From NCBI RefSeq assembly GCF_032062105.1, contig NW_026926657.1:62001-126000 (forward strand): 64,000 bases of DNA, written 5' to 3'. This DNA is from Saccostrea cucullata. Lineage: Eukaryota. The notes beneath the pieces are model-generated. The model worked only from the letters and a program-made list of their open reading frames with translations. It was not told the DNA's origin and ran no database searches. Positions within the stretch are counted from its first letter, which is position 1. Every line of letters begins with the position of its first letter. A program made the position numbers and the translations under genes. Of this stretch, positions 14,601-54,870 are shown in pieces.

Positions 14601-17600
14601 CTACAAATTTATCAGTTGCACTTGTTCCTCAGTTTGAGAGATTTCATACTGGTCCTCCAAGTAATCATCTGCATAAATAAGAGTTTGTCTTATCGCCGTC
14701 AACACTAGGATATTAATCGGCTTGTTCAGTTGAGTCTCCTTTTCGTAATTCTTTACCGGAAACACGTGACCCCTTGGAAGGCCTATGAGTTCTGCGGTTT
14801 TCTCGAGTGCTCTTTTACAGGCCTCGCTATAGAAGATCATACGCACATCTTTATCAGCTAAAGGGCAGATTTTGTCCAATTTTGTCAGATACACAACCTG
14901 TGGAATGCCTGGTCAATAAAAAAAGTCTTATTAAAGCTACATGAAAAAAAAAGTTTTGCAATACATCTGCAAGATCAACGTTTAATTAATCATTGATTTT
15001 TTCCCTTCAACTAAATGCTTATAGAATTTTGAATATAAAAATTGAAAATATCAAAAGGTTTGAAACGCAAAATTTCGAAAATTCAATTAACTTTAAAGGA
15101 AATTTGCATTTGTTTACTACCTCTCTCTACCATGAGAGATTGAAATTCCAACATTTTTCGTGGAACGGTTCCTTGCAATACATCAACAGAACTTCCGTCT
15201 ATAATGAAAGCCGCACAATGAATTTTATCCTTAAATGAGGGTCTAGAATTAAATCCCGGATCCCTTTGGCAGGCCTGTGCCATAGGATTAAACTGCAAAT
15301 TCAAATGTTATACAGATTTTATTTTGTTTTCATGTTCACAAATTAACAGACCTTGTTTGTAGAAGTAAAATTTCCGTGTAGCTGAAGATAGAATACCGAC
15401 CTTGTACTGATCAGATAAATGTCCGTCAAGTAACAGTGCCATATCTTGGTGTTTAATGGACATTTCCTCTTCTATGCCACGGGTATCACAAAGCCGGAAA
15501 TTAAGATAGCCACCTGTCTCATGATTCCTGACTCTGTATTTACGTAGCTTAAAAATAGAAATGAACACATTTAGTTTCATTCATAATATAAATAGTTCCA
15601 ATCGTAAACAGGAATGTTTGTACGTATTTCTAACAACAGGTGGACGTTACATATACACACGTCCAATGTAGTTTATGTGAATCGAAGGAAGCACTAGCCG
15701 TGGCCTTCATCTCGACATTTAGATATATCGATGACGAATAGTTAATTCTTATGTCGATACGAAATATCCCGATGATCTTGATTTAAAAGAAACAAAGAAA
15801 CCACAACCTCTCACACATCTGTTTCATGTTTAGACATTTTACTTAAATTAGTGGTTAATGGTCAATTTTTTCAATTGTCAACACCTCTTTCTAATACAGC
15901 CATATACTTCTCCCCTGCATACGGGGTTTATATATCTCACTTGATTCTATACGAAGGAGAACATATATACTCTACGTATGAGCAATTTCTAAAACGAAGA
16001 AATTATTGACAAACAAGTTACTGAAACACAAGTTTCAGCTGTCTCCTTCAAAGTCATCATTTCTAACGTTCTATGGTCGATCCAATGAACTCGTTAGCAA
16101 ATGAAATTTATCATTTTAATAAATGATAAGGAATTTTGGTGCTCTCTGATTGGTCTAGACGCCATTTACTGGTGTGTACCTCAGAGTGAGTTCACCTCAA
16201 TTGACGTTCTGGGAGGTTAATTCGGGTTTTCCCTCTCGACCAACCATAGATTTGCTTACAGCTTTTTCGACCAATCAGATAGCGTGTTTCAAAGCATGTG
16301 TCGGTGTGAATGTAAACATGTCAGACGCCATTACAAAGGAGATTAAGAACTTTTGAAAGTAAATGGTTGAGTATTTATTGTTTATTAATATTGTTTTTAA
16401 CTTTTTTAACTAATAGTTGTTTAGCTGTTGAAGTATATCTATTTGTAAAAAGTGTAATTACACTTTACATTATGGGTGTTTATATTTGATGTAGATAAGA
16501 ATGAAAGAGTCAGCAGTGTTGTAAAATTCCCTCATCATTTAATAAAACGGTTACTGACTTTTGAATTCGGTCTACTCGTGACTATACAGACCTGGTCAGG
16601 TATTGGTTAACCTCGGCCTTCGGCCTCGGTCAACCAATACCTGACCAGGTCTGTATAGTCACGAGTAGACCGAATTCAAAAGTCAATAATTGTATAAAGT
16701 TAAATGCTAACTGGCATTTTTTAAAACTGTTAATTCATTAGTTATACACTGAATTGATGAAAGTTTTTTCCGTTAGTTCCCGATCATGACAAAGAGCACA
16801 TGGTGGTTGACCAGTTGGCAGGGGATGCTCACTCCATCATGACACCTGATCCCACCTCTAATGTATTTCGTGGATGCATAATTATTAATCATTTGTCTTT
16901 CAGAGATAAAAAGTTTAACTCGAAATGTTAATTCGTCTCGCAATGGAACTAATAGATATTTTGGATCTACTATGTAGATATATAACAAAATACTAAATCC
17001 CCCCCACCCACCCCCCGACCCCCCCCCCCAAAAAAAAAATCAATACAATACCATATAATAAAATTCAGCTGTTACAATGTACCTTTGACAGGTAAACTTT
17101 TCGGGATGAAATTTGTATTACAATGTAAATTGAATAGTCTCTAACTTACATTCGTAGTCACACTATGTGGGGAGTTTCCGGCGCACGCACGTGCAGTTAT
17201 TTCACCGCGAAAAATAGAGTTGACTGTGTTGAAAAAACTGGATTTTCCAGAGCCTATCTGTCCTACTAGTAGAATATTAACCTCGGGAATGTTCATATCT
17301 TTCAACGGTTTGTAACTGGAGACAAAATGTTTCAAAGCTTGAAAATTCTGAAAAAAGAAAAAAAAGTGTATCATCATTAATGCATGAAATTACAACTAAG
17401 TGTTATATCAATTTTAGTTATTCAGCTTTGATTTTCAAAACATTCACATTTAATAATTAATGACTGAAAATAAAACTCGCATGTTCATCCCAGAGCGGCG
17501 GTTCCCTCCATGCCTTCAACGACATTTGTGAATGTGCGGGAACTACGGCGGGTCTCCTTGCTTAAAGAAAAGAATTTACATTTACCATTTACTAGCTAGC

Positions 17601-20883: not shown

Positions 20884-23800
20884 TTAAGACAGAGTACACA
20901 TGTACCCAGTCTTTTCTCTTGTCCTTTTACCCTCGGCATCCATTTTATCAAGCTGCCCATCCATGAAATCATCCGCAAAATCAAGACACTGTTGTACAGC
21001 GTTCATCAAAAGAATACCGGCACCAATATTCAGTTTAGTCTCCTTTTCGAAGTTTTTTACCGGGAAAATGTGACCACGTGGAAGTCCCATAATCTCTCCA
21101 ACTTTCCTAACAGCTTTAGCAATAGTTGTACTTGTAAACGTGTTTGAGATATCCTCCTCCACATCCGGGCATATATTGTCTAGTTTGGTCAGCAGGACGA
21201 CTTGTGGCATGTCTATAATTATGAAATAAGACATCAACAATACATTTATGTCATTTAAAACATTCACTTTATATGTTATTAGTTTTGGCTCTGAAAAACT
21301 TTTAAAGTTTTAATTATATATGACATACGAAATCAGATGATATTTCTAGAAATATATTTACCTTTTTTTAACTTTAATTATTGATTTCATAAAAAAATTA
21401 AAAATGGCAGTTTTATATGAAACCTTAGACTTCTCTTATTTCTAAAATCATTCTAAAACATTTATCTTAGTCTGTTTCTTACTTCTCTGATTGAAGATGA
21501 TTTGCAGATCTTTTATCTGTTTACGGACTTTTTCAGGCATGACGTCGATGGTGCTTCGATCTACCACAATGGCTACACAGTGAATTTTATCCTGCAGATT
21601 CGGGTCATTTATGAATTTAGGACTATCTGATGACATTGGAACCATGGGATTGAACTACAAATGATAAGTCTCATTTAAGCCACAGCAATTTGACAGTTGT
21701 CCCATTTTCTGTTACAATCAATGATCATGACATTTTTTTTTTTACAAAATGAGTACATTGAATATTGAGCAAGATATCCTTTATTTGGCAAAAAAGTGAC
21801 CAAGAGAAAAAAACATTTTCTAATTAGATTAAAAGTAATGAACTGGTTTCAAATTTGAATATCTAAACTCTACCTCTGAAACAATACTTTAGACGAACAT
21901 GTGTAATCGACCTTGAGATATGCACAAATGAAAACAAAATAATTTATCAGTACAACTTTTATCCACTGGTTACATTTTATTTAAGTTAAAATAGATGCAG
22001 GAGAAAGCAAACCTGGTACTGATCTGGAATATTACCATCCAGGATAAAAGCAATTTCTTGTACATCCATTTCAAATTCGTCCTCGAATCCTCTCGTGACA
22101 CACAGACGAAAGTTAAGGAATTTCCCTGAGGTAAAGTCTTTGATTTTGTATTTTCTAAACTGAAAAAAGCATGTTGATGTTATATATTTTGCTCACAGAA
22201 AATGAAAACAATCGTAGGTTTTCATAACATTATCTGCATTGACACTCATTGCAAAGTAATCCCAATACCGAATGTCCTTGAAATAGATTAACACGAAAGT
22301 GTTGTTTAGAGAGATGTGATATACCTATCCCGTTTTTCCATCACCAGTAAAAGCTATTCTGATTTAAAACAAAATAAAAACCGTATATAGTAGACATACA
22401 GCTGTCGTCACACGGTGCTCAAAGCTCCCACTGGAAGTTTTACTGGTGATTTCCCACGGAAAATGGAGTTGACTGAGTTGAAAAAGCTGGACTTTCCTGC
22501 TCCAATTTGACCAACCAAAAGAATGTTTGCTGCGGACACATTTGTTCCTTGGAATGGTTTGTAGTCCACGAGCGATTTCTTTAGGTTACAATAAAACTTA
22601 AAGATAAACAATATATTTATTTCAAAAATCATTAATACTTCTAAAAATTTCTCATATTGATAACCTCATTATGTTATGTAGAATAGATGCAGAAAATTTG
22701 CAAAATCTTTCAGAAATTTCAAGAAATGTGTGCAAATACTTGAATTAGATATACGGAAAATAGCACAAAGTCGCACATATGAACACCAAATTTTGTGCAC
22801 CATGTATCGATTTTGTGCAATTTATCTTTAAGCGTTTTTGCTTAAACCACACTTGGAATAAAGTTTGTTGCTATTGCAAAATAATTTGGATTAATCTTTG
22901 CTAAAATATTTAGCAGATTCATCAAGCAACCAAAATTTGAATAGATTTTTTATCATTGAGTCACATGTTTAAATATCGTAGTATCAAAGATAAATTATCT
23001 TTTAAGATAAAGATAAAACTAACAGACTTTTATCAATTTTAGAAAAAAAATTTCATTGTCAAGAAAAAGAAACTTTTAAAAAAAATGATATTTTAAAAAA
23101 GGTACCAAATTTTACTTTTGATTCGATTCAAGAGTTACATTTTCTTGGTGAATTTTACCAAATTGTCAATTTTCATGTTTCTAAACATAATCATATTTAC
23201 TATCAATGAATAAATCAAGAAAAATGCATATAAATGCAATAGCAATAAATTTAATTACTGTCCAAAATCACATTCTTTGCTTGTCTTATCTCAAGCTTAA
23301 GGAAGTAAATTTAAAAAAAAAAAAAAGGCTTTCGATTATTATTTGTAAATAAATAAACCCATCCCCTTATAATAGGACTTGATCCTGAGCAGAAAGGGGA
23401 TATAATTGTCAGTTGAGTAGTTTATTAAGTTTATTAAATGATTATACATGTATGCTGAAAATAATCATCGAAACATTTGCTAGACGATAAATTGCAGAAA
23501 GAAAATTTTCAAATATATTATTTATTATAGAGTTACTGTACTTTCAATAATTATGTATTCACATGTAAAGCAAACTTGGTTCTTGTCTCATCTGAAGGGT
23601 TCTTGTATAAAGCCTTAAAATTAACCTGAATGTAGACACAGTAGGGAGTGGTGCCTATTTGTGCAAACATTGCGTTTGTTTGATGAAAAATGTCAAAACA
23701 AAAAAAAATACTCCATCGCTCCATTCTGGTGGTTCTCTCCAAAGTTCGATACAATTCTTCCCTCTTCGTTCCTCTACAACAAAAATTAATAAACACTATT

Positions 23801-24348
23801 ACTACATGTATATCACTTCAAATCTATCAATATTTAAATATTGCATGAATATTTTGTGGGGATATTTTGATTGGTGCTTTCTGGATTACTAAACAATAAT
23901 AAAATTAATCTTGAATGCATTCATTACCTCTTCAACATGAAATGGAGGTCTCTTAATCTTAGATTATTGTCAGTTATATACTATATCTAGTAGTTAAAAT
24001 GTAAATAGTATATGTAGTATAGTATAGCATTGTATATTATACTATGTGTAGTTAGAACTTTCCCAATTTTCAGTATCATGGGCAAAATTTCACAAGACAT
24101 GGCGGTTTTTATGCATTAGGAGAAAAGGATACCCATCATTTTTTATATCAAAATTGACTTTTTTCATCAATAGCTCATCTTCATCATATCATATGAGTGA
24201 AAAATTCTCAAGAGGGACATTAAACAACATACAATCAATCAATCAATCAATCATCATATCAAATAAATAAATGAAATCCTCATAAAAGCAAGATATCTTA
24301 TGAAATTGCACTAATCAAACGTCTAATCATGAAAAGCTTACCTGACAT
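20884..24348 (-). pseudogene. Short TLDc-less IFI44-like copy C (duplicate of copy E), frameshifted
   Basis: Exons 24348-24342, 23773-23712, 22596-22400, 22159-22013, 21654-21483, 21212-20884. The G1 exon is 197 nt versus 198 in all other copies (1-bp loss at ~22450-22452). G3 DTRG is changed to VTRG and VVDGS to VVDRS. The C-terminus still reads CTLS. Confidence 0.78.
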
Positions 24349-24915: not shown

Positions 24916-25594
24916 CTCTGTTTTCCATTCAGGAGGTTCTCTCCAAGGTTTATCAAAAACTTTTGGTCCTTGGCCATCTAATGTTAATATGGAAAAGATT
25001 TTTTTATATTTTTCAAGAAAAAAATTTCGAAACTCAAAAAAGAAAAAAAGAAACTGTACCTACGACAAGGTAGACCTCCAAATCTGTAACCCTCAGATTG
25101 TTGTTTGTCATAGAGTTGGTATTCTGCCCGCCGTAACTGAAGTTATTATTGTTATTCATATTCAGACAACCATTCAATGCAAACTCTTTTCCAGACTTTG
25201 AAATATTCCCTTTAAATGTCCGTAAATCACTATTGCATCCAAAGGATGGACCATGATCTTGATTCCCTAATCCAGCCTGATCATAATTGGAGCTATTGAC
25301 AGGGGCTTTCAGTTGATTGGACGAACCATTATACTGCAGTCGGAACAGAAATGCCCTGGCATCACTGATTTAACTGTTATTGGAGTTCGAGCTCTGTGAC
25401 AGGTACCCCCCAAATATCGTGTTGTTAGTGTTGTATAGAACCGTTACCGTAGGACCCTGACCGTCACACTTCTGATGGAAGGTTGTGTTTGAACATCCAT
25501 CTCTGCTGATCTTGTACAACAACCGGAAGTGACATGTCTTTCCTATCCAGATGGTCAACTGCTCACGGTAATTTTGCTTCAAAAGTTCAGGCAT
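24916..25594 (-). pseudogene. Truncated IFI44L copy D: TLDc exon + linker exon only (duplicate of copy F 5' part)
   Basis: Exons 25594-25060 and 24977-24916 closely match copy F (MPELLK...; DGQGPKVFDKPWREPPEWKTE). There is an in-frame TAA at 25372-25370, the conserved W is changed to S (QSSNS vs QNWNS), and no GTPase exons of its own precede copy C. Confidence 0.8.
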
Positions 25595-27955: not shown

Positions 27956-28931
27956 GCGTTACACTGTATGGTGAACCATGTCGATCATTTTGCATTTTAA
28001 TATTAAGGGTGGGTCTCCATTTGTCAAACCTGCGTTCGCCGAATGCGTCACTTGACCTTTTATAACCCGGCTTTTTACTTCTTTGACCAGGGAAGGTTAG
28101 TGGCCGGGCTCGCCGATTTCTCAGGTCTTAACTATTCGGCACGGTAAGAGCCGGTGTAAAGACAAATAATTACCCCATAGAATAATGTCCGGTAGTCATT
28201 TTTCGCTACTCTCAAACTTTGCATACCTAACGTGAAGAAAAATGACCCCGTAGAACAATGCCCCCTTGCGGATAAAAGTTTAAATTTTTAGGGGGCAAGA
28301 AAATGAAACCTTCTGGCCAAAATGCTTACCTGAGCTTAATTGAGAATAAATTGGAGATATTTTTTTTTATTTCATTGCATTATACAATTCTTGCTATTTT
28401 AAGGTCAATACGATTATTCAGAATTTTGAGGAGGAGAAGAAGATTTATCTATACCAAAGGGCGAGGTGGAATTGATTTTCGATGGTGTGGAAAACCATCA
28501 TATAACAGCAAGAACAGCAATGATTGTTTTATCAACAATCAAATTGATACATACTTAATAAGCATGCATGTCAAATTTGTTGTTTACAGTTGCCCAAGTC
28601 CTTGCCAATCATGGTGAGAGAATCGGAGTTAGCATAAGCATAACCAGTATCAGTTTTACATTTGCTATCTATTTTTGGTGCAATGAAGAATAAAATACTA
28701 GTAGCATCATAAGAGACAAAAGAAACAAGATATCATAGAAATATTTTTTATGAAATCCTCAAAATGAAGTAAGGAGAATTTCCATTTACTCTACTGGATC
28801 AAAATATTAGGACAACAAAACTTTATTACTCTGGTTTACAATAAAGCATGAGTATTCAAATGCTGATTTTTTCACAGTCACATTCTTCGTTATATATCTG
28901 AAGTTTTGATAAAAACACACATTGTCGATCC

Positions 28932-31900
28932 TTAAGACAAAGTACACGTGTACCCAGTCTTTTCTCTTGTCCTTTTACCCTCGGCATCCATTTTATCAAG
29001 CTGCCCATCCATGAAATCATCCGCAAAGTCAAGACACTGTTGTACAGCGTTCATCAAAAGAATACCGGTACCAATATTCAGTTTAGTCTCCTTTTCGAAG
29101 TTTTTTACCGGGAAAATGTGACCACGTGGAAGTCCCATAATTTCTCCCACTTTCTTCACAGCTTTAGCAATAGTTGTACTTGTAAACGTGTTTGAGATAT
29201 CCTCCTCCACATCCGGGCATATGTTGTCTAATTTGGTCAACAGGACGACTTGTGGCATGTCTATATTTATAAAATGAGCCGTCAAAATGTAGTTTAAAAC
29301 ATTAATATCATGTGTTATTTATTTTGATTCGGATTCAGACGTTGTACATGTACACCTAAGTATGATATAGAGATGAGATATTCTCCTTTAAAAAATATTC
29401 TCTAAACTTTTATTATTATTCATAAGAATTACGAAAATGAAATGTCATTTAGAAACTTAGCTTGAGACTTATTCCTGCGATCATTCGATGACATTAATCT
29501 TACTTTGTTGAAATTAATTTTAGTTTGTTTCTTACTTCTCTGATTTAAAATGATTTGCAGATCTTTTATCTGTTTCCGGACTTTTTCAGGCATAACGTCG
29601 ATGGTACTTCCATCTACCACAATGGCTACGCAGTGAATTTTATCCTGTAGATTCGGATCATTTATGAATTTAGGACTATCTGATGACATTGGAACCATGG
29701 GATTGAACTACAAATGATCAGTCTAAATTAGGCCACAGCAATCTGGCAGTTGTTTTTTCAATTTTTTTTAACAAAATGAGTACATTAAATATTGTGCATG
29801 ATATCCTTTATTTGACATATCATGACTTTTCTCTCAAATATTAGAGCATAGAGTGTTGATTGAAATAAAAAGAAAAGATACAGAAAAATATTCTACATTT
29901 TCTAAATTAAATTAAAATCAAATGGTTTCAAATTTGAACATTTGTTAAATTCTACCGCCGAAACAATACTTGAGACCAACATCTAGATTTGTAATCGACC
30001 TTGAAATATGCACAAATGAAAACAAAATAATTTATCAATAAAAGATACATCAGATTTTACTGATGCATTTAAAACTTTTGAAGTTGATTTAGAAGCAAGA
30101 GAAAATAAACCTGGTACTGATCCGGTATATTACCGTCCAGAATAAAAGCAATTTCTTGTACATCCATTTCAAATTCGTCCTCAAATCCTCTTGTGTCACA
30201 CAGACGAAAGTTAAGGAATTTTCCTGAGGTAAAGTCTTTGATTTTGTATTTTCTGAACTGAAAAAAGCATGTTGATCCTTATATATTATGCTTCCAGAAA
30301 ATAGAAATCCTTGGTTTTCATTACATTACCACCATTGACACTCATTGCAAAGTAATCACCATACCGAATGTCCTCGAAATAAATTACATGAGAGTGTTGT
30401 TTTAAAAAAGGTATTATATCTATCCCTTTTTGCCATCACCAGTAAGAACTATTCTGATTTAAAGCATAAAAAAAACCGTATATAGTAGACATACTGCGGT
30501 CGTCACACTGTGCTCAAAGCTCCCACTGGAAGCTTTACTGGTAATTTTCCCGCGGAAAATGGAGTTGACCGAGTTGAAAAAGCTGGACTTTCCTGCTCCA
30601 ATTTGACCAATCAGAAGAATGTTTGCTGCAGACACATTTGTCCCTGGCAGTGGTTTATAATCCACGAGCGATTTCTTCAGGTTGCAATAAGACTTAAAGA
30701 TAAACAAAATCTTTATTTCAGAAATCATCAATACGTCTAAAAAGAAAATTCTCATATTGATAACTTAATTAATGTTATCTAAAATAGATGTAGAAAATTT
30801 GCAAAGTCTTTCAGAAATGTCAGGAAATGTGTGCAAATACTAGAATTGAGATTTACAGAAAATAGCACAAAGTCCGATTCTGAACACCAAACATTGTGCA
30901 ACATTGATTTCGTGCATTTTATCTTTAGGCGTTTTTGCTGAAACCACATTTTGAATAAAGTTTGTTGCTATTTCAAAATCATTTGAATTAATCCTTACTA
31001 CAATATTTAGCAGATTCATCAAGCAACCAGAATTTGAATAGATTTTTTATACCCCCCGCTTGAAAAGCGGGAGGGTATATAGTAATCGTTACGCTTTGGG
31101 GTACCCATCTCTTATCCGCAACTCCTCTCATACCACTGAATGAAATTTGATAAAACTTTCAGAGAATCATTTTTACATATTGCCATTGTGCACCTCCTAT
31201 TTTACTTTTTGATCCGACACATATTTTGGGTTTCACGGCCACAGCAAAACATGGACTTTGCCATTATAACTATATGGAGGCGGGGGGTATCATTTAGTGA
31301 GGTCATCGCTCACAGTACCTCTAGTTTTTCATTGAGTTACATGTATATGTATCGTTGTATCAAAGATAAATTATCTATCAAGTCAATACAATTCTATTTT
31401 AAAGAGACTTTTATCTTTAAATATAAAACAAACGTGCATTTCTTTTTTCTGGATTCTTATCTTTCATTTAGAAAAAAAAAATTATTGTCAAGAAAAAATA
31501 CATATTTTAAATATTTTGTCAAGTTACCAAATTTTACTTTTGATTCGATACAAAAGTTATATTTTCTTGGTGAAGTTTACCAAACTGTCAATTTTCATGT
31601 TCTAAACATATTCATATTCACTATCAATGAATAAATAAAGAAAAAATGTATATAAATGCAATAGCAATAAGAAGACGTTACGGTTTAAGCTTTATTGTGC
31701 ACTAAAAATTTAAAATTCTCTTAAAAAGTTATTAAATTGGCTTTAACAATAGTTGAGTGGATGAATTTGATAAATCAAAGAATGTGGCATGAAGAAGAGC
31801 CTTTCTTGAAAATATGACGTCATTAATTTGGTACAATTTCAAGTTCAATGCAGAAAAGCTTCAAAATGACTCGTTTTTCTGCTAATTTTCCTTTAGAAAA

Positions 31901-33765
31901 TAGCGTCTTCCACCGTCGCCCGCTTTAATTTTTGGATATATTATGCAAACAGCTATGAAAAAATCACATATCTCAAAATCTTCACAATCTTCCTCTACAG
32001 CGTTCTGGTTTAATCTGCGACGGTGGCAGAGTATGATTTCTGAAAGAAAAATTCCACTGAAAATTGAGGTTTTCTGCAACTTTTTAAGAAAATACGGGAA
32101 AATGCTCAAGTTAATGACGTCACAATTGGCATTTAGGAGGTCATTTGAGAAAAACCATTTGTGTATACTTACGGCAGAGAATTCCTATGATTCAGAAAGA
32201 ATTAATTTTGATTTCTTATATCACTTTCATATTTCATAAAAATATAGGGCTTTATTTGTATTGAAACTGTACATTGTACCTTGAAGTTCTTTAATTATTG
32301 ACCAAAATCACATTCTTTGCTTGCTTAGTGTCAAGAAAGTAAATTTTAAAAAGGTTTTCGATTATTATTTTTAAATAAATAAACCCATCCTTTTATAATA
32401 GGGCATATTTTTATTGATCCTGAGCAGAAAGGGCATATAATTGTCAGTTGAGTAGTTTATCAATTCATTAAGGACTATACATGTATGCTGAAAATAATCA
32501 TCGAAACATTTGCTAGACGACAAAATCAGAAAAAAAAATTCAAAAAATGTTTCAGTTACTGTAATTTCAATATGTATTCACATGTGTAGCAAACTTAGTC
32601 CTTGTAAAAAGCCTTAATATTAACCTGAAATGAAGACAGTAGGGAGTGGTGTCTATTTATGCAAACATTGTGTTTGTTTAATGTAAATGTCAAAACAAAA
32701 AAAATTACTTCATCGCTCCACTCTGGTGGTTCTCTCCAAAGTTCCATACAATTTTTCACTCTCCGTTCCTCTACAACAAATAGTTAATATGCACTATTAC
32801 ATGTACTATATCACTTTAAATCAATTTAATATTTATATAATTATTGCATAAATATAGGAGGGGGGGAATTTTAATTGGTACTTTTTGGATTACTAAACAA
32901 TAATAAAATTAATCTTGAATATATTCATTACCACTTCAATATGAAATGGAGGTCTCTTAATCTAAGATTCTTGAAAATTATATACGATATCCATTTACAC
33001 TGTACTTTAGTTAATAAATTATGGATTTCCATCCCTAATAGGACCAAATTCCCTACCCTTAAATGTCCGTCAAGTGCATAATACTCTGATATTATATTAA
33101 AACATTTTATAATTATAGTGGAAAAGGACTTCCTACGAGAAAGTTGAAAAAATTCCATTAAACAGTAGTTAATTAACAAAGAATGCATTGAAGTCTATGG
33201 GGAAAAGCAGTTTTTTTTTTCAAAATAAAAATTCAAATAATTTGAATATCAATAAATCCTGCTGTGGAAAGATGCATTGAAACATGAAAAATACAATGAC
33301 AATTGAAAACCATTTCTTTTTACTGGCTGAAATTTTTCAATTGATTTTTTTCATTAATTAAAAAGGGGGAGATAACTCTTACAAAAATTCAATTTCAGAA
33401 ATTAGGATACATCCCACTGTACATACTGATAGTAATAAATGGGAAGTATGTCTAAATAAATTGAGTATTCAATACCTACAATCTTTTATGTATTCATGAT
33501 TTTTTTTTTCCTTTTAGGGATTGAATTCCTATACAATATGCAGCAGTTAGAACTTGAACTTTCCTGATTTTCAGTATGGCAAATTTCACATGACATGGCA
33601 GCTTGAGAAAAAGATACCTATCATTTTTTTCTTAGTTGAAATTTATTTTTTAATCAATAGCTTATTTTCATTGTATCAAAAATAAACAACCTCCTCGTAA
33701 AATAAAGACAACTTATAAAATTGCCTTATAATCAAACGTCTAATCACGATAAACTTACCTGACAT
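28932..33765 (-). CDS. Short IFI44-like GTPase copy E, no TLDc domain, C-terminal CaaX (CTLS), ~304 aa
   Basis: Exons 33765-33759 (accATG TCA G|gtaag), 32770-32709, 30692-30495, 30257-30111, 29707-29536, 29260-28932 are all GT-AG and in frame (915 nt). Protein reads MSEERRVKNCMELWREPPEWSDE...GQIGAGKS...DTRG...TKLD...FPVKNF...GKRTREKTGYTCTLS*. Confidence 0.85.
31049..31325 (+). mobile_element. Short Helentron/DINE-like (HINE) insertion
   Basis: 5' hairpin ATACCCCCCGC-TTGAAAA-GCGGGAGGGTAT; subterminal GCGGGGGGTAT near the 3' end followed by a GTGAG..CTCAC stem and CTAG. Inserted in a T run and absent from the paralogous intron of copy C (~22945). Confidence 0.75.
31669..32290. mobile_element. 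~620-bp insertion (probable MITE) in copy E intron
   Basis: Present between ...aatagcaata and ttaatta... in copy E but absent at the matching site of copy C (~23248). The terminal inverted repeats are degenerate. Confidence 0.5.
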
Positions 33766-33767
33766 GG

Positions 33768-33777
33768 TTTCATTTCC
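33768..33777 (-). promoter_or_regulatory. ETS-IRF composite-like element (GGAAnnGAAA) immediately 5' of copy E start codon
   Basis: Minus strand GGAAATGAAA directly before CC-ATG. Copy C has AGAAATGAAA at 24351-24360. Confidence 0.35.
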
Positions 33778-34157
33778 TCTTCTCGGAAAATGGGTTTTTT
33801 AAAAAAGAATTATTAAGTATTTCTGAAAAAAGTCTTCTTTCGATTTTGTGTTGAATTGTATGGCCTGCCATTTTCATCATAATTTTGTATTTTGAATTTA
33901 CACTTTTCTTCATTTCAGACTCAGTCAGATAATCTACTAGTAGTTCGTCTATTTAATATAACTCATCTAAACTCGGTGTAACATCTGTTTGTTATCTCTT
34001 TACATAATGAGTAGTTTTTTCCATACAAAACGATTACATTGCATTCCTTATAAAAATCTATTATGTTTGATTGTTATTTGGAGTAAGTGAAAGGCAACTG
34101 AAATTTATATTTGGAGGTACAGAATAACCTGTAGTTCCTAAATTGATAATAACAAAG

Positions 34158-34609: not shown

Positions 34610-37544
34610 TCAGTCTTTTTCTTTTTTCAACTTTCCATCTGTAGCCATTTTGTCAAGTTGTTCATCCATGAAATCGTCTGCAAAATCAAGACACTGTTGT
34701 AGCGCTTCCATCACAAGAATATCCACGCCTGTCTTCAGCTTGGTCTCACTTTCGTAGTTTTTCACCGGAAGCACGTGACCACGAGGAAGACCCATGATTT
34801 CTGCAACTCTTACAACAGCGTCAGAAACGGCAGAGCTCGAAAATGTGTTCTTGATGTCCTCTTCCACTTCAGGACATATTTTGTCTAATTTAGTCAGGAG
34901 AACAACTTGTGGCAAATCTGTATTTAATGATACATTGAATGATAACTACGTAATTCATTAGAGTTATATTTGCTCTTTTTTATTTACTTTTTTGATTTAT
35001 TTGAGAAAGAATATATACATACATCCACATTTTTTTTTGTACAAGTGCAATGTACGGAAGCTCTTTTACGATATGAATATTTAGCTCAACATTTAATTAA
35101 ACGAATATAGCAAGTTATTTCCCAGAACAAATAAGTACAATTGAAGAAATCGACAACCATCCTTCCATCAACTTCCGACCTTCGTGTGTTAGTGTCCCCT
35201 ACATCATTTTTATGACCACTAAAAGGCTTTCTTCTCGATCATCAATTATGTACCTCCGTACATGATACAGGTTTTTATGTCTAAGTAAAACATCAACTGT
35301 AAAAGTCAGTGCTTCTCGCATAAGTCCATTACTTGGTAAGGGTTTAAAAAGCATTGTAAACCTTTTATAGATTTGTTCTAATTTACCTTCAAAGAACATT
35401 TTTCAAGTTACAGGGATTTGTAAATAAATTCACCAAGACTTAAGTCAAATTCTCTAAGAAGATTGGTAATATTAATGATTATACATGATTTCTTTTATGT
35501 AGAAATATTTATTTTTCATGTTTTTACTTATGATATTATTGTTGCATGTTGACATAATTTTTTTTTCATTTTGTGTGATCTTTTCCTAATATATTCTTAC
35601 TTCTTTGATTCAGTTTGACTTGTAGATCTTTCATCTGCTTGCGAACTTTGTCGGGCATTACGTCTACAGTACTACTATCTACCACAAAAGCCACGCAGTG
35701 AATTTTATCCTGTAGATCCGGGTCTTTTATGTAGCCAGGGGTTTCTGATGTGAAAGGAACCATTGGATTAAACTACAAAAGAGTCAAACAGCCATTTATT
35801 TTATATATCTTTAAGAGTTTTGCGCAATCTTTCTCTGTAAAATAAAACGTCTAATATTCATAAGTTGTTTTTTTTTTCTTTTTTTACATACAAACGGATA
35901 GACATATGAAGGGCTTTTACTTAATACTCCTCTCTTCATCTCTCTGACCAGATCTTCTTATAAGTACAAACCTGGTATCGGTCCGGTATATTACCATCCA
36001 AAAGGAAGGAGATTTCCTGCACATCCATAGCAAATTCCTCCTCTAAACCTCTGGTGTCACAAAGGCGGAAATTAAGGAACTTTCCAGATGAAAAATCCTT
36101 GATTTTGTATTTTCTATACTAAAATGATGAGAAAAATAATTGAAAACGAAATGAAATATTGATTACTTTGCTCAATATCATTCATGCTGAAAAAAAAATA
36201 ATCTATTGCAAAAATTAAATTGTTTGGATTATTTTTTTAAAAAAAGAATAAATATAATTAAAAATAATTTATCATTTAATAATGTCGAATTCGATTTTGT
36301 TTACATACAGCTGTTGTCACGCTGTGCTCAAAGTTTCCACTGGAAGCTTTACTGGTGATTTTCCCGCGGAAAATGGAGTTGACCGAGTTGAAAAAGCTGG
36401 ACTTTCCCGCACCAATTTGACCAATCAGAAGGATGTTGCCTGTAGTAACATTTGTCTCTGTCATTGGTTTGTAGTCGATGAGAGATTGATTCAGCTTCTG
36501 ACAGGTCTTTAAAAGATTTAGTATACAGGTTACGTATAGTGTTTAGGTCCGATGAAATATCATATACTAGTACTCAGTATTATGAGCAAAACTTAACCCT
36601 TTGATTTTTTTTCTCTATGCAATACCGGGGGTAGTAGATGACGAGATATAAAAAGATACTAGTAGTTTAAAGGGACAGCACACACACAAGCCCAAATGTT
36701 CAATAACTTTACGGTATCTATCTTTGTAAAAAGTGGGAGAGGGTAAAGGTAAGCCCCCACCTCATAGCCCCCGCCCCCGGTACTGACACCTTTGTTCATT
36801 TGTACAATTTTACCTCAGTGTTCCATTCAGGGGATTCTCTCCAAGGTTTGTCAGAAATCTTTGGTCCAGGTCCATCTACAATATTTATTTGAATTATATA
36901 CTATACTACAATGTAGTTGACTATTTCTAATCTTTTAGCAATTACACTCATAATATAGAGGTTTGTTTTTTATGCCATTGGATGTCTATTGAATACTATA
37001 AAAATACTATACCTACAACAAGGTAGACTTCTAGGTCTGTCACCCTCAGATTACTATTTGTAATAGAGTTGGTATCATATCCATTGTAATTATAGTACCC
37101 GCTCGTCAGACTTACACTGCCATTCAGTACAAATTCTTTTCCAGACTTTGAAATATTCCCTTGAAAAGCCATGAGGTCGCTGTTGCCACCAAACGATGGA
37201 CCATAATTACTAATGCCAGAGCCGGCATAATTATAATATGAAGCATTGACAGGAAGTTTAACTGGATTTGAAGAACCATTATACTGCAGCCGGAAAAGAA
37301 ATGCATTCGCATCACTGATGTTGCCGCCACTGGAGTTCCAGTTCTGTGACAGATATCCCCCAAATATCGTGTTGTTGGTGTTATAAAGAACCGTTACTGT
37401 AGGTCCCTGATTGTCACACTGTTGGTGGAATGTTGTAGCTGAACATCCATCTCTGCTGATCTTGTATAATAACCGGAAGTGACAGGTCTTTCCTATCCAG
37501 GTGGCCAACTGCTCACGGTAAGTTCGTTTCAGAAGCTCAGGCAT
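34610..37544 (-). CDS. IFI44L: IFI44L-like copy F, TLDc + P-loop GTPase, ~472 aa, 6 coding exons
   Basis: Exons 37544-37013, 36875-36814, 36506-36309, 36118-35972, 35772-35601, 34917-34610 are all GT-AG and in frame (1419 nt). Motifs LLYKISRDG, GPSFG, PWRESPEW, GQIGAGKS, DTRG, TKLD, PVKNY. Probable non-coding first exon ends at 38915. Confidence 0.92.
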
Positions 37545-43341: not shown

Positions 43342-46300
43342 ATGTTATGGATTCTTGAGCTGCTGTTTCTGTTTTTGTCAGTGAGTTGTGGCGTCGGGTT
43401 CAACGAGGTTGACAAGACCCGATACGAAGAGGGGAGAACGCAGTACGAAGTTCTACAGAGACGTTCAGAGAACCCACAGTACGGTAAATGTTGGACCAGC
43501 ACCGTGGCCATGATACAGGAGGGCTGTAGACATCTTACAGACGTGACTCAGAGCAGGCTAGCGCTGGCCTATCTGAACTGCTTCTTAGAAGTGCAGGGGA
43601 GGTCCCCGTACCATTGTGATGAGACTATGAGCGTGAAAGAGTGCTTACTGGATGTTACGGAGTCAGACAGAACATCTCTGACGAATTTCTTCACGCACAC
43701 CCACAGCATATGTTATTTTCTGCAGTCTCAGATCTGGCACGAAAATACACAGAATACGATCACCAGACTTAGCCAGGCATCAGATGAAGTGGCAGAGAAT
43801 CTGGCAGCAACAACAGACTTACAGAGAGAGGCTCTCAAAAACCAGGAAATCATCATCCAACAGTCAACAAACCTCAGCAATATTATCAACTCATCGTCCG
43901 AAAATCTTCCAGCGGTTATGTCAGATTTTCAGAAGACAACAGATAAACAACGAATTCTCATTAACGATATATTTGACAAGATCGTCCACCTTCAGAAGAC
44001 TATGTTGGGAGAGTTTTCTGGGTTTTACTCTATTGTGTATTACACTGTGTCTATAGTGTTATCTTATCTGTTAACATCGACTCCCCGCACTGCGGCAGCT
44101 AGATTCTGGATGTTTGGTATCGTGACTCTCAATATCATAATGGAGAGGATCATTATTTCCATGTTCACCAGTGGTTACGTAGAGGATGGAAATATTGAGG
44201 TAATGTTAACAGGGCTTAAAATCATATGTCTGGTGCATGCTGTATGATAAAAGAACTTTTGGATTCAAAGTCTTGGACTATAAATGTTATCAAATGCACT
44301 GTACAAGTACAAATTGGACCATGTTGTGACGTGCATTATTTAGTGATTTACATGAGTACACTATACAGTAATCTGTATATTCTATTGTGGAACAGTAAAA
44401 TCATACTTCCATTACTGTAGTGTAACTGTAACAACCCAAAAACTTGATCCATTTAAACTGATCAAATTCATGGACATTTAACTTAGACAAGTGCTTGCAC
44501 TGATATACACTAATACATTATGCATGGATGTGCATCATAAGTAATAACATTAAATAAATAGAAAAAAATTAATAAAAAAATTAAAACAAAATTGTATTAT
44601 TTAACATTGTTTAACAAATGTTTAAGGAAATGTTAATGTTTCATAATTTTCACATAGGAGTCTGCCTACAGCTGGCACGTTTTCTGTCGTAAAGTCAGTG
44701 GATCTCTAGCGGTGGTCATACTGGTGATTCATGCCGCTCGATACCGGGACCTTAATGTCGTCAACAATCAACTCCTCATGGACATCAAATCAGAGCTGAG
44801 ACTTCTACGTAATTCTGAATTTTATTGTTTACATTTTATATTTATTATTATGTCTATTGATCAATAAGCATAATTAAGTGTAATTGCTAAGCTTATAAAT
44901 CTTAAACTTTGCAGGGTGTTAAACTTTCTAAAGAATTTTATAATTCCTAGTAAATTGATAAGGACAATATAGATGCTGAAAAAAATTATTTTAAAAAAAG
45001 CAATTAAATTCAATTTTCTGACTGAGGGAGTTTTTTAAAACATTTACTTTTTTTAATTTTCTTGTTTATTATAAAATCTTCTAGGTTACAAAGAAAGGGG
45101 ACACAATTCAGATGAGGTTGATCACATCCTTCCAGGTGTACAGGAAGCAGCCCTCACCGGCCCAGGGCGGGTGTCGACACCCCCTCTCCACCACACCCAC
45201 ACCACCGGCCCAGGGCGGGCGTCGACACCCCCTCTCCACCACACCCACACATCAGCTGCTGCAGACAGTAAGATAGCTTCATACTCTAAAAGTTTGTCAT
45301 TGAAATATATAACTACTTATTGCGCATAGGTCATCTGAGTCCTTCAAAAGAGACTCAATCCCATCGAATTTCATCTCTTGTATCGTCTTTTAATTATGAT
45401 ATGCAAGGAAAACACATATGTTTAATAGACCCTTTTCCTGTGACATGTTTTGCCTAGGAGTTATTCTCCTTAGCCGCCATCTTGTAGGGCAAAGTAGTGA
45501 ATTTACCTCTTCTAGTAACCAATTTTATATAAACATGCATTCAAGAAATATATGGGGCAAAATATTCACAATCTTATAATCATAAATTAATAGATGCTTT
45601 AACAAATGTATATTCATAAGAAAAATATCATTATCTTTACCTCAGTAACCAGAATAACAAATTGAACTTGGTTGAATAATTCTGGGAACTCAAAATGGCG
45701 GCAGGGAAATAACTTGACAAAATATGTCATAGGAAAAGGGTCTACTTAATTCACTCAAAATCAGATGTGGCCAAAGTTTACCAAACTTGCGATGTGTAAA
45801 ACTGGGTGCTTTGCAGATTTAGTTTTGTACAAACCATGGCTGACAAAAGAGGAATGGTGAATTTACATAAATAAAATTTAAAGTCCAAGAACTACAATTG
45901 CTGGGCCTCTTCCTATTTTTCAATTCTACATTTAATCTTGGCAATTGACCTTAGAAAAAAAAATTGAGAGTGACATTCTGTCTGATATACAGGTACTGAA
46001 GGATATGAATCAGATTCCGCTTGGAGCAGTTCATCCGACTTATCCGAGGAGTCCTCCTACACCGACGTCAGTTACCATCCACATCCCACAGACTTTGTCA
46101 GGGGAGATCACTCTAACGCCTCCACCAGTAACTGTGGATCATCACACATCGGTGAGGGGGAATTGGAATTCCTGAGAAATTCCACCCCAATCCGAGAAGG
46201 AAGCTTCCAGAGAATTGAGGAATGGAGGAAAACTGGTTACTATACTACACCAAATGGAGGTAGGTGGATGTAGACGGATAATTAATATACTGAAGAACCT

Positions 46301-50100: not shown

Positions 50101-50182
50101 ATACAAATATCTGACACTCCAAAGGGAGATAAGTCTTGATTCCACTTCGGAATTGCTGTAGGAATTATATCACTTTTATTTA

Positions 50183-51208
50183 TGTAGTAGAGTGCGCCGG
50201 AACATATTTTTCCGTCAGTCCGGGCTTTAATTTTAGGCATTGTAAAAGAGTTCCCCTCACATGGCAGGTGTTGTCAGATGTTCCTTACTGCCGATTTAGC
50301 CACATGTTAGGTAGGTTCTACTTGATGATTTATATCTTAGTATGTTCTAGACTAAAGTAGTTATGTATATCCTCTGTTTGATTAGCTGTCTTAGTTTATA
50401 ACATAGAAATAGGTTGCATAGTTAGTCTTTGTTTACAGTGTCAGTTTGTATTCCCGCCATTATGAATTCTTTTGTTTGGTTGTTACATTATATGTATTAA
50501 ACTAGTCCCAGATAGGTTTTAATGTTATTTGAATAATACTCATTTATAATTCTAAATACCTTGTTGTGATTGGTAGCTCGATTGTGTTATTTAGCAATTA
50601 TTGCATGTCCTGTACAATCCGGAATGGTCAATTCTAATGTACAATCAGACCATGTTATGTATATCCGGAAAGGCGCAATATTTGAGATCACTCGTCGCCA
50701 CTCTCTCAAAAGTCATCGTAAGTTATCAATGAGAAATGTTTGTACTTGTGGATTTCTAGTCAAAGGTCTTGCTAGTCATAGTTACATGGATGATGTACTG
50801 TGTTTTTATTATTAATTAATAATATTTTGTTAGGAATCAAAACACTTAGGGCTGTACTATACTTTAACTAACATAACAGTAAGCTGAAGTAGCATATGTA
50901 TTTATGTAGATTTACTTATACTTATCTTAAGGATATGTAAGTTAAGTCTGTTTATATACCAAATTAATTATAGATCATATGCACCATAGTACATGTGCCA
51001 TCTAGGGTAGAGCCCCCTATAATATTTCTTATTTGTATCTTACATGACACCACTATTTGTTCACTCCATTGTTCTCTGCATGTTATTTTATGATTAAGTG
51101 CAGTCATATGTGTACAACTTGCTGTTCTTTCTGTTGCAGGTTTCCATGTACACTGCCACCTTTTTTTTGCATTAATAAAATTATGAAATCTGAACCAACT
51201 CGTCCACA
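50183..51208 (+). repeat. 5' LTR (1026 bp)
   Basis: Near-identical to the 3' LTR: four substitutions and one poly-T length difference found by eye. AATAAA near the 3' end. Confidence 0.95.
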
Positions 51209-51331
51209 AATGGCGTCGCCGGTAATTTTCTAAAGGTGGTGGTGGAGAGAAAGCAGCATCAAGATGAACAAAAAGGAAGTCAAGGCCCAGCTGGAGGCCC
51301 TGAGGGCTGAACAAGGGACACTGATGTTTGG

Positions 51332-54300
51332 TTGAAGAAGAATAGTCGTGTGGCTCTAGTGTCTGAATGCGACGTTGACACAGCACCTCGAGCTAAAGCG
51401 GAGTTTCTGTCTACAGGAGTAAGGGAGGAAACGGTTGTACTGCATGATGACATAACTGGAGATTCACCAGCTTTTGATGCATCCTCACTTGTCCCAGAGA
51501 ACATGGAATGCACTTCAGAAGAAAGACAGAAGATTTTAGATCTATTCTCAAGGAATTCTGACGTATTTGTGAAGAATGACCTGGACGTGGGATGCGCTGA
51601 GACTGTTAGGCACCGCATTAATTTAACAGATGGAGAGTCTATAAGCATGCCTTACAGAAGAATACCACCAAATCAGTATCAAGAAGTTAAAAACCACATA
51701 CAAAAACTTCTGGAGAAGGACATAATCCAGCCGAGCAAGAGCCCTTATGCTGCGCCCATAGTCATTGCACGCAAGAAGGACAATACCATTAGACTATGTG
51801 TGGACTACAGGAAGTTAAACCACCGCACGATTCGTGACGCCTTCCCTCTCCCACGCATTGAGGAGTCTCTTGATGCCCTTCATGGATCTACACTGTTTAG
51901 CACCATGGATTTGGCAAGTGGCTTCCACCAGATAGCAATGCATCCAGAAGACCAACACAAAACTGCTTTCTCGACTCCTTTCGGTTTATACGAATATCGA
52001 CGCATGCCATTTGGCCTATGCAATTCACCAGCAAGCTTTCAAAGACTAATGCAGCAGATTTTCAGCGACACAGTTTTCCAGATTTTACTGGTTTATCTTG
52101 ATGATATAGTGGTATACTCTAGGACCTTAGATGAACATCTACAGAGGTTAGACCTGGTGTTTGCTAAGCTACGGGAACATGGCCTTAAACTCAATCCACG
52201 CAAATGCCACTTTTTTCAACAGGAAGTGCAGTATCTAGGCTACACAGTCTCCAAGGAGGGGATTTCTGCATCCGAGGACAAAGTAAAAGTTGTAAAGGAT
52301 TGGCCACTTCCTAAGACACTTAAGGAACTGAGAGGATTTTTGGGATTCTCAAGCTACTATCGTAGATTTGTATCGAAATATGCTCATACTGCAAAGCCAT
52401 TGTATGGACTGATAGCCACTTTCAACAGGAATAATCCTCAAAAGACTAATGGACAACTGAAACATTTATGGACACCAGAGTGTTCCACTGCATTCAACAC
52501 GCTGAAAGATAAGCTGACATCCACAGATGTGTTGGGGTTTGCAGATTACTCCAAACCATTCGTCCTGGAGACAGATGCAAGTTTGAATGGGTTGGGTGCT
52601 GTTCTGATGCAGGAGCAGGAAGGAAAACGTCGTGTCATCGCCTATGCTAGTCGCACACTCCGTCCTACAGAGCGCAACGACTCTAACTATAGCTCTGCTA
52701 AACTTGAACTGCTTGCAGTTAAATGGGCTGTGACTGAAAAGTTTAAGGATTATCTATGGGGATCAACATTTGAAATCCTGACAGACAATAACCCCATAAG
52801 TTATCTCCAAACAAGCGCAAAACTGGGAGCTACTGAACAACGTTGGGCCATGCAACTAGCACAATATAACTTTACCATCAAGTACCGACCTGGAAAAGAA
52901 AACACTGCGGCTGATGCCTTGTCTAGAATTTCCAGATGTGATTCCATTTCATCCATTGTGCCAAATACATGCAGTGCACTTACCTGTGAGATTAGAGTTA
53001 AGGCCCTTGCATCAGCAATCGAGGGATGTGAAGACCGTGCTATGACACTACATCCGACAGCAGTATGTTCTAGTGTGTTTTCGTTCCCCAGTTATGACCT
53101 AGAAGATATCATCAAAATGCAGAGCCAGGACCCCGTTATCTCAAGTTTCATGAAGTATTTCCTTATTGGACAAAAGCCGTCTAAGAAAGAAAGGGAGGGA
53201 GAAACACGAATTGTTATTGACATGCTACGACAATGGGAGAGGATGGTCTTAAGACAAGGTCACCTATATCGCAGAGTAAACGACCCCCAACAAGGCCAGT
53301 TGCAACAGCTTGTGTTACCTAAGTGTTTACAAGACCAAATTATGACCCAACTCCATAAGCAGTCAGGACATCAGGGTGTAGACAGGACAGTCAGTCTAGT
53401 GAGATCTAGATTTTACTGGACTGGAATGTACGCTGACATCAGCGAGTACTGCAAGTCATGCGAAAGGTGCAATTCAGCAAAATTACCACACTTGCGAATG
53501 CGGTTACCTATGAACCATCTTCTAGCCACGAAACCAAATGAGATCGTAGCCATGGATTTCACTCTTCTAGAAAAGTCGTCAGATGGCAGGGAAAATGTTC
53601 TAGTTCTAACTGATGTTTTCTCCAAATTTTCTATCGCAATCCCGACTAGGGACCAGACAGCAGTAACAACAGCCAAGGTTCTCATGAGAGAATGGTTCAT
53701 GAAGTATGGAGTGCCAGAGCGCATACATTCTGATCAGGGCAGAAACTTTGAGGGATCTCTGATAGCTGAGCTTTGTAAGATGTACAAGGTGAAGAAGACT
53801 CGCACAACGCCTTATTACCCCCAGGGTAACGGACAATGTGAACGGTTCAACCGAACGCTGCATGATCTTTTGCGCTCATTAACTCCACGTGAAAAAAGAC
53901 ATTGGCCAGACCAGTTACCAGAACTGCTGTTTGTATACAATTCCACAGTACACTCTTCAACAGGTTTCACACCTTTTTACCTGTTTCTGGGAAGAAATCC
54001 ACGGTTACCTGTTGACTCCATGCTTCTTTTTGAGGAGGAAGGGGAAGAGGATGAAGTTAACCTTCATGAATTTGTGGAACAGCATGCCCAGCGATTGAAG
54101 ACCGCATACGAAAAAGCAGGGGAGAAACTTCGGGCAAAGGCAAAAGACCGTGAAGGTGACAGAGAGGAAATGGCAACACATGATCTTCCTATTGGTACTA
54201 TTGTCCTCTTAAGAAACCGTGTTCTAGGACGCAACAAGATACAGGATGCTTGGGGATCAAAGGAATATATGGTTGTAAAACGAGTAGACCCAGACCGTTA

Positions 54301-54592: not shown

Positions 54593-54870
54593 TTTTGTGT
54601 ACAAGTCATTTTCGAGATGTATACTGACTGTATTTTTTAGTTATCTAGAGTTTGTTTATTTTTTGATTAGTAAGACAATTACAGTTAATTGTTAGGTTGT
54701 GATGTTTAAGATTGTATTTTTCATAAGTTTTTCTGTTACAACATACATTTAAAATAACTGCCAATGTTTCTATGCTCGTATTAATATGTGGTGTATTTTT
54801 TACAAATTCTTGTTTATATAAGGCCGTTTTTCCTGTAACAAGGGCCGTTACATGGTTAAGCAGGGGAGAA

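What the first reader, a model, noticed from the sequence alone, without database searches (positions are those of the whole stretch)
28932..33765. TLDc-less IFI44 GTPase that has gained a C-terminal CaaX prenylation motif (GBP1-like anchor)
Seen: copy E has no TLDc exon. A 7-nt ATG micro-exon splices in phase onto the linker exon, the G1/G3/G4 motifs are intact, and the last exon is 7 codons longer than in neighbour F, ending GKRTREKTGYTCTLS*. Its duplicate C ends GYMCTLS* with a synonymous TTG/CTG difference inside the motif. None of the three TLDc-bearing copies ends in CaaX. Known: CaaX with X=Ser is a farnesyltransferase substrate, the interferon-induced GTPase GBP1 ends in CTIS, and several TLDc proteins (NCOA7, OXR1, MEAK7) bind V-ATPase. 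Inference: this paralog replaced a protein-based targeting or sensor domain with a lipid anchor, giving a membrane-tethered immunity GTPase convergent with GBPs. I am not aware of a described prenylated IFI44, but cannot check that here.
Basis: partly seen in the sequence, partly recalled or inferred. Interest (0 to 1): 0.85.

Follow-up and report, generated by a model that had tools for sequence, protein, structure and literature searches.

The report
Oyster IFI44 with a prenylation tail
An oyster immune GTPase gene lost its front (TLDc) domain and, through a one-base deletion, gained a conserved lipid-anchor signal at its end; three other bivalve lineages gained such a signal separately, which suggests that some IFI44 proteins work on membranes.

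Summary
Observation confirmed. Copy E is an intact six-exon, 304-aa, TLDc-less IFI44-like gene of the oyster Saccostrea cucullata ending CTLS; my model equals RefSeq XP_062610578.1. Two S. echinata orthologues keep the 7-nt ATG exon and CTLS. dN/dS is 0.03-0.13 and DNA conservation ends at the stop codon. The tail arose by a 1-nt deletion that put the ancestral KEKD stop out of frame. Other CaaX-ending IFI44s occur in Magallana/Crassostrea (CSIL, CSIS, CTVL, CSVQ; spliced contigs exist), scallop (CNFL) and clam (CNIL). The tree needs at least four origins, and CTLS+CSIL as one clade is rejected (p-AU 1e-4). Corrections: copy C is frameshifted with a broken G3 motif, so its synonymous change proves little. 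TLDc loss is common and mostly without CaaX, and one scallop gene has both. The fold is closest to Toc34/GIMAP/septin, not GBP1. I found no paper on a prenylated IFI44. The scan had earlier noted the long+short gene cassette on this same stretch, not on other DNA.

The parts
33768..33788 (-). GAS-like (TTCNNNGAA) plus IRF-like (AANNGAAA) pair just upstream of the start codon; candidate STAT/IRF control element of the short gene
   Evidence: Present in E, C and both S. echinata copies. Shuffle chance about 1.5e-4 per 60 nt, but the pattern was chosen after seeing it; the same letters could be a splice acceptor.
33759..33765 (-). 7-nt first coding exon ATGTCAG, donor GTAAG
   Evidence: ATGTCAG|GTAAG invariant in E, C and S. 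echinata L036:10001 and L037:8590; RefSeq starts XP_062610578.1 and XP_061167740.1 here
32709..32770 (-). Linker exon (62 nt, phase 1 to 0), WREPPEW
   Evidence: the internal ATG is not conserved in C or the C9142 copy
30495..30692 (-). Exon 3; G1 P-loop GQIGAGKS at about 30608-30585 and G2 threonine
30111..30257 (-). Exon 4; G3 DTRG at about 30197-30186
29536..29707 (-). Exon 5
28932..29260 (-). Exon 6; G4 TKLD at about 29237-29226, long C-terminal helix and tail
28932..28961 (-). Frameshift-born tail KTGYTCTLS; CaaX box CTLS at 28946-28935, stop at 28934-28932
   Evidence: 1-nt gap in the A-run against F-type GAA AAA GAY TGA; 21-22 of 24 nt identical to S. echinata before the stop, 6-9 of 30 after it
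28822..28827 (-). AATAAA 105 nt after the stop; candidate polyadenylation signal
34610..37544 (-). Neighbour F: intact TLDc-IFI44, 472 aa, ends KEKD; nearest non-CaaX relative of the E clade
   Evidence: equals RefSeq XP_062610577.1; 75% identical to E over the G domain; tree
20884..24348 (-). Copy C: duplicate of E ending CTLS, but with a frameshift in exon 3 and G3 D>V; probable young pseudogene in this haplotype
   Evidence: the probable allele on G000:C9142 has intact exons 3-6 (XP_062611391.1)
24916..25594 (-). Copy D: relic of an F-like gene (TLDc exon with an in-frame TAA, plus linker exon; no GTPase exons)

Best explanation
E is a working, short IFI44-family GTP-binding protein that is prenylated at Cys301 and so held on cytoplasmic membranes. 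Shown: it arose in Saccostrea as a tandem copy of an F-type TLDc-IFI44 gene, lost the TLDc exon, starts from a new 7-nt ATG exon, and gained its last residues by a 1-nt deletion that reads past the old stop. Start exon and tail are conserved in two species. Inferred from established CaaX rules: farnesyltransferase modifies CTLS (X = Ser), the aaX is clipped and the cysteine methylated, and four basic residues just upstream add weak membrane affinity. Inferred by analogy with its closest folds (GIMAP, Toc34): GTP-dependent dimerisation makes the weak anchor effective and builds a scaffold on endomembranes during the antiviral (STAT/IRF) response. The same solution arose separately in at least three other bivalve lineages.
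For: Intact model identical to RefSeq. dN/dS 0.03 within species and 0.10-0.13 between species at dS 0.58-0.88. CTLS unchanged in 5 copies, P about 3e-5 if the tail were neutral. Conservation stops at the stop codon. In the separate Magallana/Crassostrea clade the Cys at -4 is fixed while the last three residues vary among CaaX-compatible ones: CSIL, CSIS, CSVQ, CTVL, CSLL. That clade has intronless contigs with an in-frame stop upstream of the ATG. Tree: 5 label changes; CTLS+CSIL monophyly rejected, p-AU 9.8e-5. Model pLDDT 93 with the last residues unstructured after a long helix. CTIS and CNIL suffice to send GFP to the Golgi (PMC2998424). Prenyltransferase-family genes exist in this genome.
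Against: CTLS is no more conserved than expected at the protein's own rate (P = 0.28 at dN/dS 0.12), so in Saccostrea the data show coding constraint, not selection on the cysteine as such. The basic patch (4 K/R, 2 D/E) is weaker than GBP1's KMRRRK. GTP hydrolysis is not shown for IFI44 in the papers read (PMC6712396 mentions only a GTP-binding domain). Copy C is broken. No prenylation predictor was available.
Confidence: 0.62

Rival explanations
1. E is a functional TLDc-less IFI44, but the tail is a tolerated by-product of a frameshift. It is conserved only because it is coding sequence, and prenylation is absent or does not matter.
For: CTLS conservation fits the protein's average constraint (P = 0.28). 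Random tails give C at -4 in 3.4% of cases. The family's C-termini vary a lot, and most TLDc-less members have no CaaX.
Against: Four independent lineages each end in a CaaX box with aliphatic a2 and a permitted X. In one of them the Cys stays fixed while its neighbours vary. A new dispensable tail would be expected to drift in length, yet the stop position is fixed in 5 copies.
Confidence: 0.2
2. E is the membrane-anchoring partner of its long neighbour F. The prenylated short protein heterodimerises through the G domain with TLDc-bearing F and brings the TLDc domain to a membrane, as anchored GIMAP2 pairs with unanchored GIMAP7. The anchor then complements TLDc rather than replacing it. This is a more specific form of the best explanation.
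For: An F-type last exon lies directly upstream of an E-type gene in S. cucullata and twice in S. echinata, and D-C is a decayed third pair. Closest folds dimerise, and GIMAP2/GIMAP7 behave this way (PMC8201404). The scallop gene with TLDc plus CNFL shows the two features can act together.
Against: Adjacency follows from tandem duplication alone. No interaction was tested or modelled. One S. echinata F neighbour has a stop two codons early.
Confidence: 0.12
3. E's exons are used only, or mainly, by splicing from F's TLDc and linker exons (donor 36814 to acceptor 30692, in frame), giving a TLDc-GTPase-CaaX isoform; the micro-exon is not a real start.
For: Phases allow the junction. One of the two S. 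echinata RefSeq models does not use the micro-exon. No reads were seen.
Against: ATGTCAG|GTAAG, about 150 nt upstream of it and E's own linker exon are conserved and in frame in 4-5 copies of two species. F has its own complete exon set and AATAAA at +29 and +115. Two RefSeq models start at the micro-exon.
Confidence: 0.04
4. E is a pseudogene or an assembly artefact.
For: Neighbours C and D are broken, and the assembly holds both haplotypes in 23,869 contigs.
Against: dN/dS 0.03-0.13, an intact frame, and orthologues in an independent assembly of a second species.
Confidence: 0.02

Closest known systems
IFI44/IFI44L family, including oyster CgIFI44L-1 (TLDc + MMR_HSR1, 479 aa, cytoplasmic, induced through IFNLP/STAT; as summarised in PMC11682996)
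   Same: Same G domain (PF01926 above cut-off), 75% identical to the TLDc-bearing neighbour, nested in the oyster IFI44-like tree; oyster IFI44 is induced by OsHV-1 (PMC4111845).
   Different: No TLDc domain, a new micro-exon start and a C-terminal CaaX box. No lipid-anchored IFI44 turned up in the paper searches.
Guanylate-binding proteins GBP1/GBP2/GBP5 (CTIS, CNIL, CVLL; PMC2998424)
   Same: Immune GTP-binding protein with a CaaX end. CTLS differs from GBP1's CTIS by one residue, and the clam IFI44s end in the same CNIL as GBP2.
   Different: Different family: no GBP domain by Pfam, no GBP among the top fold matches, and no long helical stalk (304 aa in all); weaker basic patch.
GIMAP (AIG1) / Toc33-Toc34 / septin-like GTPases
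   Same: Best structural matches: Toc33 Z 16.0 over 211 residues, GIMAP7 Z 13.8, Foldseek top ranks GIMAP7, Toc34 and GIMAP2; weak sequence hits to septins. A single G domain with a C-terminal helix and, in some members, a C-terminal membrane anchor.
   Different: 12-19% identity; many other GTPases score within 2-3 Z units. Their anchors are hydrophobic or transmembrane segments, not prenyl groups.

Membership tests
IFI44/IFI44L family | IFI44-type P-loop G domain (GxxGxGKS, CDTxG, TKxD, PVKN) homologous to named members | tested here: met
   RefSeq names it interferon-induced protein 44-like
IFI44/IFI44L family | N-terminal TLDc domain (canonical architecture) | tested here: not met
   No PF07534 hit and no remnant. 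67 of 203 full-length homologues sampled also lack it, so E is filed as a TLDc-less variant, not a canonical member.
IFI44/IFI44L family | Induction by interferon-like or antiviral signalling | not testable with these tools
CaaX prenylated proteins | Cys four residues from the true C-terminus, aliphatic a2, permitted X | tested here: met
   C-T-L-S-stop on the genomic sequence and in five copies; the 3' end was not confirmed by reads for E
CaaX prenylated proteins | Accessible, unstructured C-terminus | tested here: met
   Predicted model only: helix ends at 298, last residues coil with pLDDT about 58
CaaX prenylated proteins | Actual farnesylation and membrane binding | not testable with these tools
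   Needs labelling or mass spectrometry; no predictor available
GBP family (dynamin-like large GTPases) | GBP N-terminal large G domain plus helical middle and effector domains | tested here: not met
   No GBP Pfam hit; 304 aa with a single 41-residue C-terminal helix; no GBP in the top 50 fold matches
GIMAP/AIG1 family | AIG1 domain (PF04548) above cut-off | tested here: not met
   13.9 bits against a cut-off of 27; fold likeness only
GIMAP/Toc34/septin-like GTPases | GTP-dependent dimerisation through the G interface | not tested
   No dimer modelling or assay; inferred by analogy only

The most novel reading that the evidence does not exclude
IFI44 proteins are membrane-acting, dimerising immunity GTPases. 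In bivalves they repeatedly split into a long TLDc form and a short lipid-anchored form (prenylated at least four times independently; others myristoyl-like or tail-anchored), and the anchored form targets the pair to a membrane where it acts against viruses.
Probability: 0.3. Interest if true: 0.75.

Novelty: new variant of a known kind. Interest (0 to 1): 0.55.

Why it matters
How IFI44 proteins work at the molecular level is unsettled: the human protein is described as cytoplasmic and nuclear with a GTP-binding domain of unclear use (PMC6712396). Repeated, independent gain of a prenylation signal points to membranes as the site of action and gives a one-residue test (Cys to Ser). IFI44 is among the genes strongly induced by OsHV-1 in oysters (PMC4111845), so the short anchored forms are candidates in shellfish antiviral defence. 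The locus is also a clear case of a targeting signal born from a 3' UTR by one deleted base.

Tried and rejected
It named no places and did not say human-like. Searches with E were run exon by exon by reference, or with exons as separate alignment rows. The joined model was only translated inside scripts for the frame check and never sent to a search; once a tool returned the RefSeq protein (P0293) I used that id. A first structure model from 9 sequences was poor (pLDDT 56) and was replaced. The E-F and F-S. echinata dN/dS rows used a wrongly phased F exon and are disregarded. I first suspected the scallop TLDc+CNFL protein of being a chimeric gene model, but it has its own last exon. No CSIL-clade orthologue with a CaaX end was found in this genome, and among the other paralogous last exons that could be read none ends in CaaX (about nine were not parsed). 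The full careful tree of 73 rows did not finish, so the quick tree is quoted for the scallop and clam origins. One pattern search and one paper search failed on syntax.
Full report
1. The observation. They give a 304-residue frame with one stop, ending in CTLS. The G1, G3 and G4 motifs are intact. No TLDc remnant lies between F's stop and E's third exon. E's last exon is 21 nt longer than F's. The TLDc-bearing copies A, B and F end GDVY, LINL and KEKD. Named paralogues place the genome as the oyster Saccostrea cucullata, and RefSeq protein XP_062610578.1 is identical to my model from first to last residue.

One correction concerns copy C. It does end GYMCTLS with the synonymous change, but its exon 3 is one base short, which stops the frame early. 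It also has DTRG>VTRG in G3. It is probably a young pseudogene, though a homopolymer assembly error for the deletion cannot be excluded without reads. A third copy on contig C9142 shares C's downstream flank, has intact exons 3-6 and ends YLCTLS; it is probably C's allele. D is a TLDc exon with an in-frame stop plus a linker exon and nothing more. So D-C looks like a decayed copy of the F-E pair, as an earlier scan note on this stretch also read it.

2. Is it more than chance? A random read-through tail ends in C-x-x-x in 3.4% and in a CaaX-like word in 0.8% of cases, and the assembly has about 60 IFI44 last exons. The motif alone would therefore mean little. Conservation decides it. S. echinata has two orthologues, XP_061167740.1 and XP_061167735.1, both TLDc-less and ending GYMCTLS. 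Both loci keep ATGTCAG|GTAAG and an in-frame linker exon, and both lie downstream of an F-type last exon. dN/dS is 0.03 within the species and 0.10-0.13 between species at dS 0.58-0.88. Of the last 24 coding bases 21-22 match S. echinata, against 6-9 of the next 30. CTLS is unchanged over about 1.2 synonymous changes per site: P about 3e-5 if neutral, but 0.28 at the protein's own rate. The tail is thus constrained coding sequence. Selection on the cysteine itself is not shown within Saccostrea.

3. How it arose. F-type genes end GAA AAA GAY TGA (E-K-D-stop). All E-type copies lack one A of that run, so the old stop is out of frame and the frame runs on into former 3' UTR. In the tree the four CTLS proteins form a fully supported clade, with F as sister at 94/91, just under the starred level. 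The start exon and its upstream 200 nt occur only at E and C in this assembly. Directly before the ATG all four copies keep a TTCNNNGAA and an AANNGAAA word, which resemble STAT and IRF sites. I chose that pattern after seeing it, and the same letters could be a splice acceptor, so it is a lead only.

4. The family survey. Among 203 sampled homologues with one whole G domain, 14 of 67 without TLDc and 1 of 136 with TLDc end in CaaX. The rows are related and the second search was seeded with CaaX proteins, so the p-value there is not to be trusted. The tree, built without the tails, is the better test. It shows four separate groups: Saccostrea CTLS; Magallana/Crassostrea CSIL, CSIS, CTVL, CSVQ; Argopecten CNFL; Ruditapes CNIL (quick tree, 5 changes). 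Holding the two oyster groups together is rejected (p-AU 9.8e-5); the scallop and clam origins were not AU-tested. The Magallana group lost TLDc differently, with the ATG inside the linker exon behind a non-coding exon. Intronless contigs from public runs carry its whole 293-aa frame with an in-frame stop upstream. In that group the Cys is fixed while the last three residues vary. Against strict replacement: most TLDc-less proteins have no CaaX, and one scallop gene has TLDc and its own CNFL last exon. Some other homologues show myristoylation-like starts or hydrophobic C-terminal tails (pattern only).

5. Structure. With a 112-row alignment the model is confident (pLDDT 93, pTM 0.90): one G domain, a helix at 258-298 and an unstructured end. 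The best matches are Toc33/Toc34, GIMAP7 and GIMAP2, with weak sequence hits to septins; many other GTPases score nearly as well. No GBP is among the top matches, and Pfam finds only MMR_HSR1 above cut-off.

6. Mechanism. Shown: gene structure, origin of the tail, coding constraint and repeated gain. From established knowledge: CaaX with X = Ser is a farnesyltransferase-type box, and GBP1's CTIS or GBP2's CNIL alone send GFP to the Golgi in a prenylation-dependent way (PMC2998424). Inferred: E is farnesylated and weakly membrane-bound, and GTP-driven dimerisation as in GIMAPs (PMC8201404) strengthens the binding. I give this 0.62. A tolerated, unimportant tail gets 0.2; the specific E-anchors-F pairing 0.12; use of E exons only through F 0.04; pseudogene or artefact 0.02.

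7. Against what is known. The oyster IFI44L described so far has TLDc plus MMR_HSR1 and is cytoplasmic (PMC11682996). Oyster IFI44 is induced by OsHV-1 (PMC4111845). Human IFI44 binds FKBP5 and dampens interferon responses (PMC6712396). V-ATPase effects are reported for five human TLDc proteins, IFI44 not among them (bioRxiv 2025.05.24.655954). Searches for IFI44 with CaaX or prenylation found, judged by titles and abstracts, only papers on GBPs or unrelated topics; subscription journals are poorly covered.

8. Verdict. A real, conserved and apparently undescribed variant of the IFI44 family. It works like a GBP only in its probable anchor and is not a GBP. The repeated gain across bivalves is stronger evidence than anything in the window. 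Interest 0.55; novelty: new variant of a known kind.

Noticed in passing
window 50182-55897 (+): Young Ty3/Gypsy-type LTR retrotransposon: 1028-nt direct repeats 99.5% identical (50182-51208, 54870-55897) around a 1086-codon open frame with RT, RNase H and integrase.
   Followed up: partly
window 43342-44247 (+): 301-codon open frame with a signal-peptide-like start, a cysteine-rich stretch and a hydrophobic end; no Pfam family above cut-off. It resembles Brambleberry/GEX1-type proteins from memory only; untested.
   Followed up: partly
G000:C9142, about 958-17337 (L033, L034, L031): About 16 kb inserted in intron 2 of the third CTLS copy; no open frame of 100 aa or more with evident meaning.
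   Followed up: partly
window 29258-28935 (-), residue 250 of E: All CTLS copies have PVKNF or PIKNF where the family nearly always has Tyr (Y250); may alter the nucleotide pocket region.
   Followed up: no
proteins P0057, P0073, P0074, P0093, P0134; P0270, P0288, P0334: Other IFI44 homologues have myristoylation-like MG starts (fish, clams) or hydrophobic C-terminal tails (mussel, scallop), hinting at several kinds of membrane anchor in the family (pattern match only).
   Followed up: partly
L084:3955 and L084:33273 (Argopecten irradians): A TLDc-bearing gene and a downstream TLDc-less gene have the same last-exon end (CNFL), suggesting gene conversion or recent exon duplication.
   Followed up: partly
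L036:572-712 (S. echinata): The F-type gene upstream of one E orthologue stops two codons early (AAA>TAA), ending KKTRE.
   Followed up: no
window 16551-16689: 139-nt palindromic stretch (92% self-complementary) in an intron of copy B, next to repeat pieces shared with 58400-60200.
   Followed up: no
window 3498-4358: Cluster of internally repeated units in an intron of copy A.
   Followed up: no
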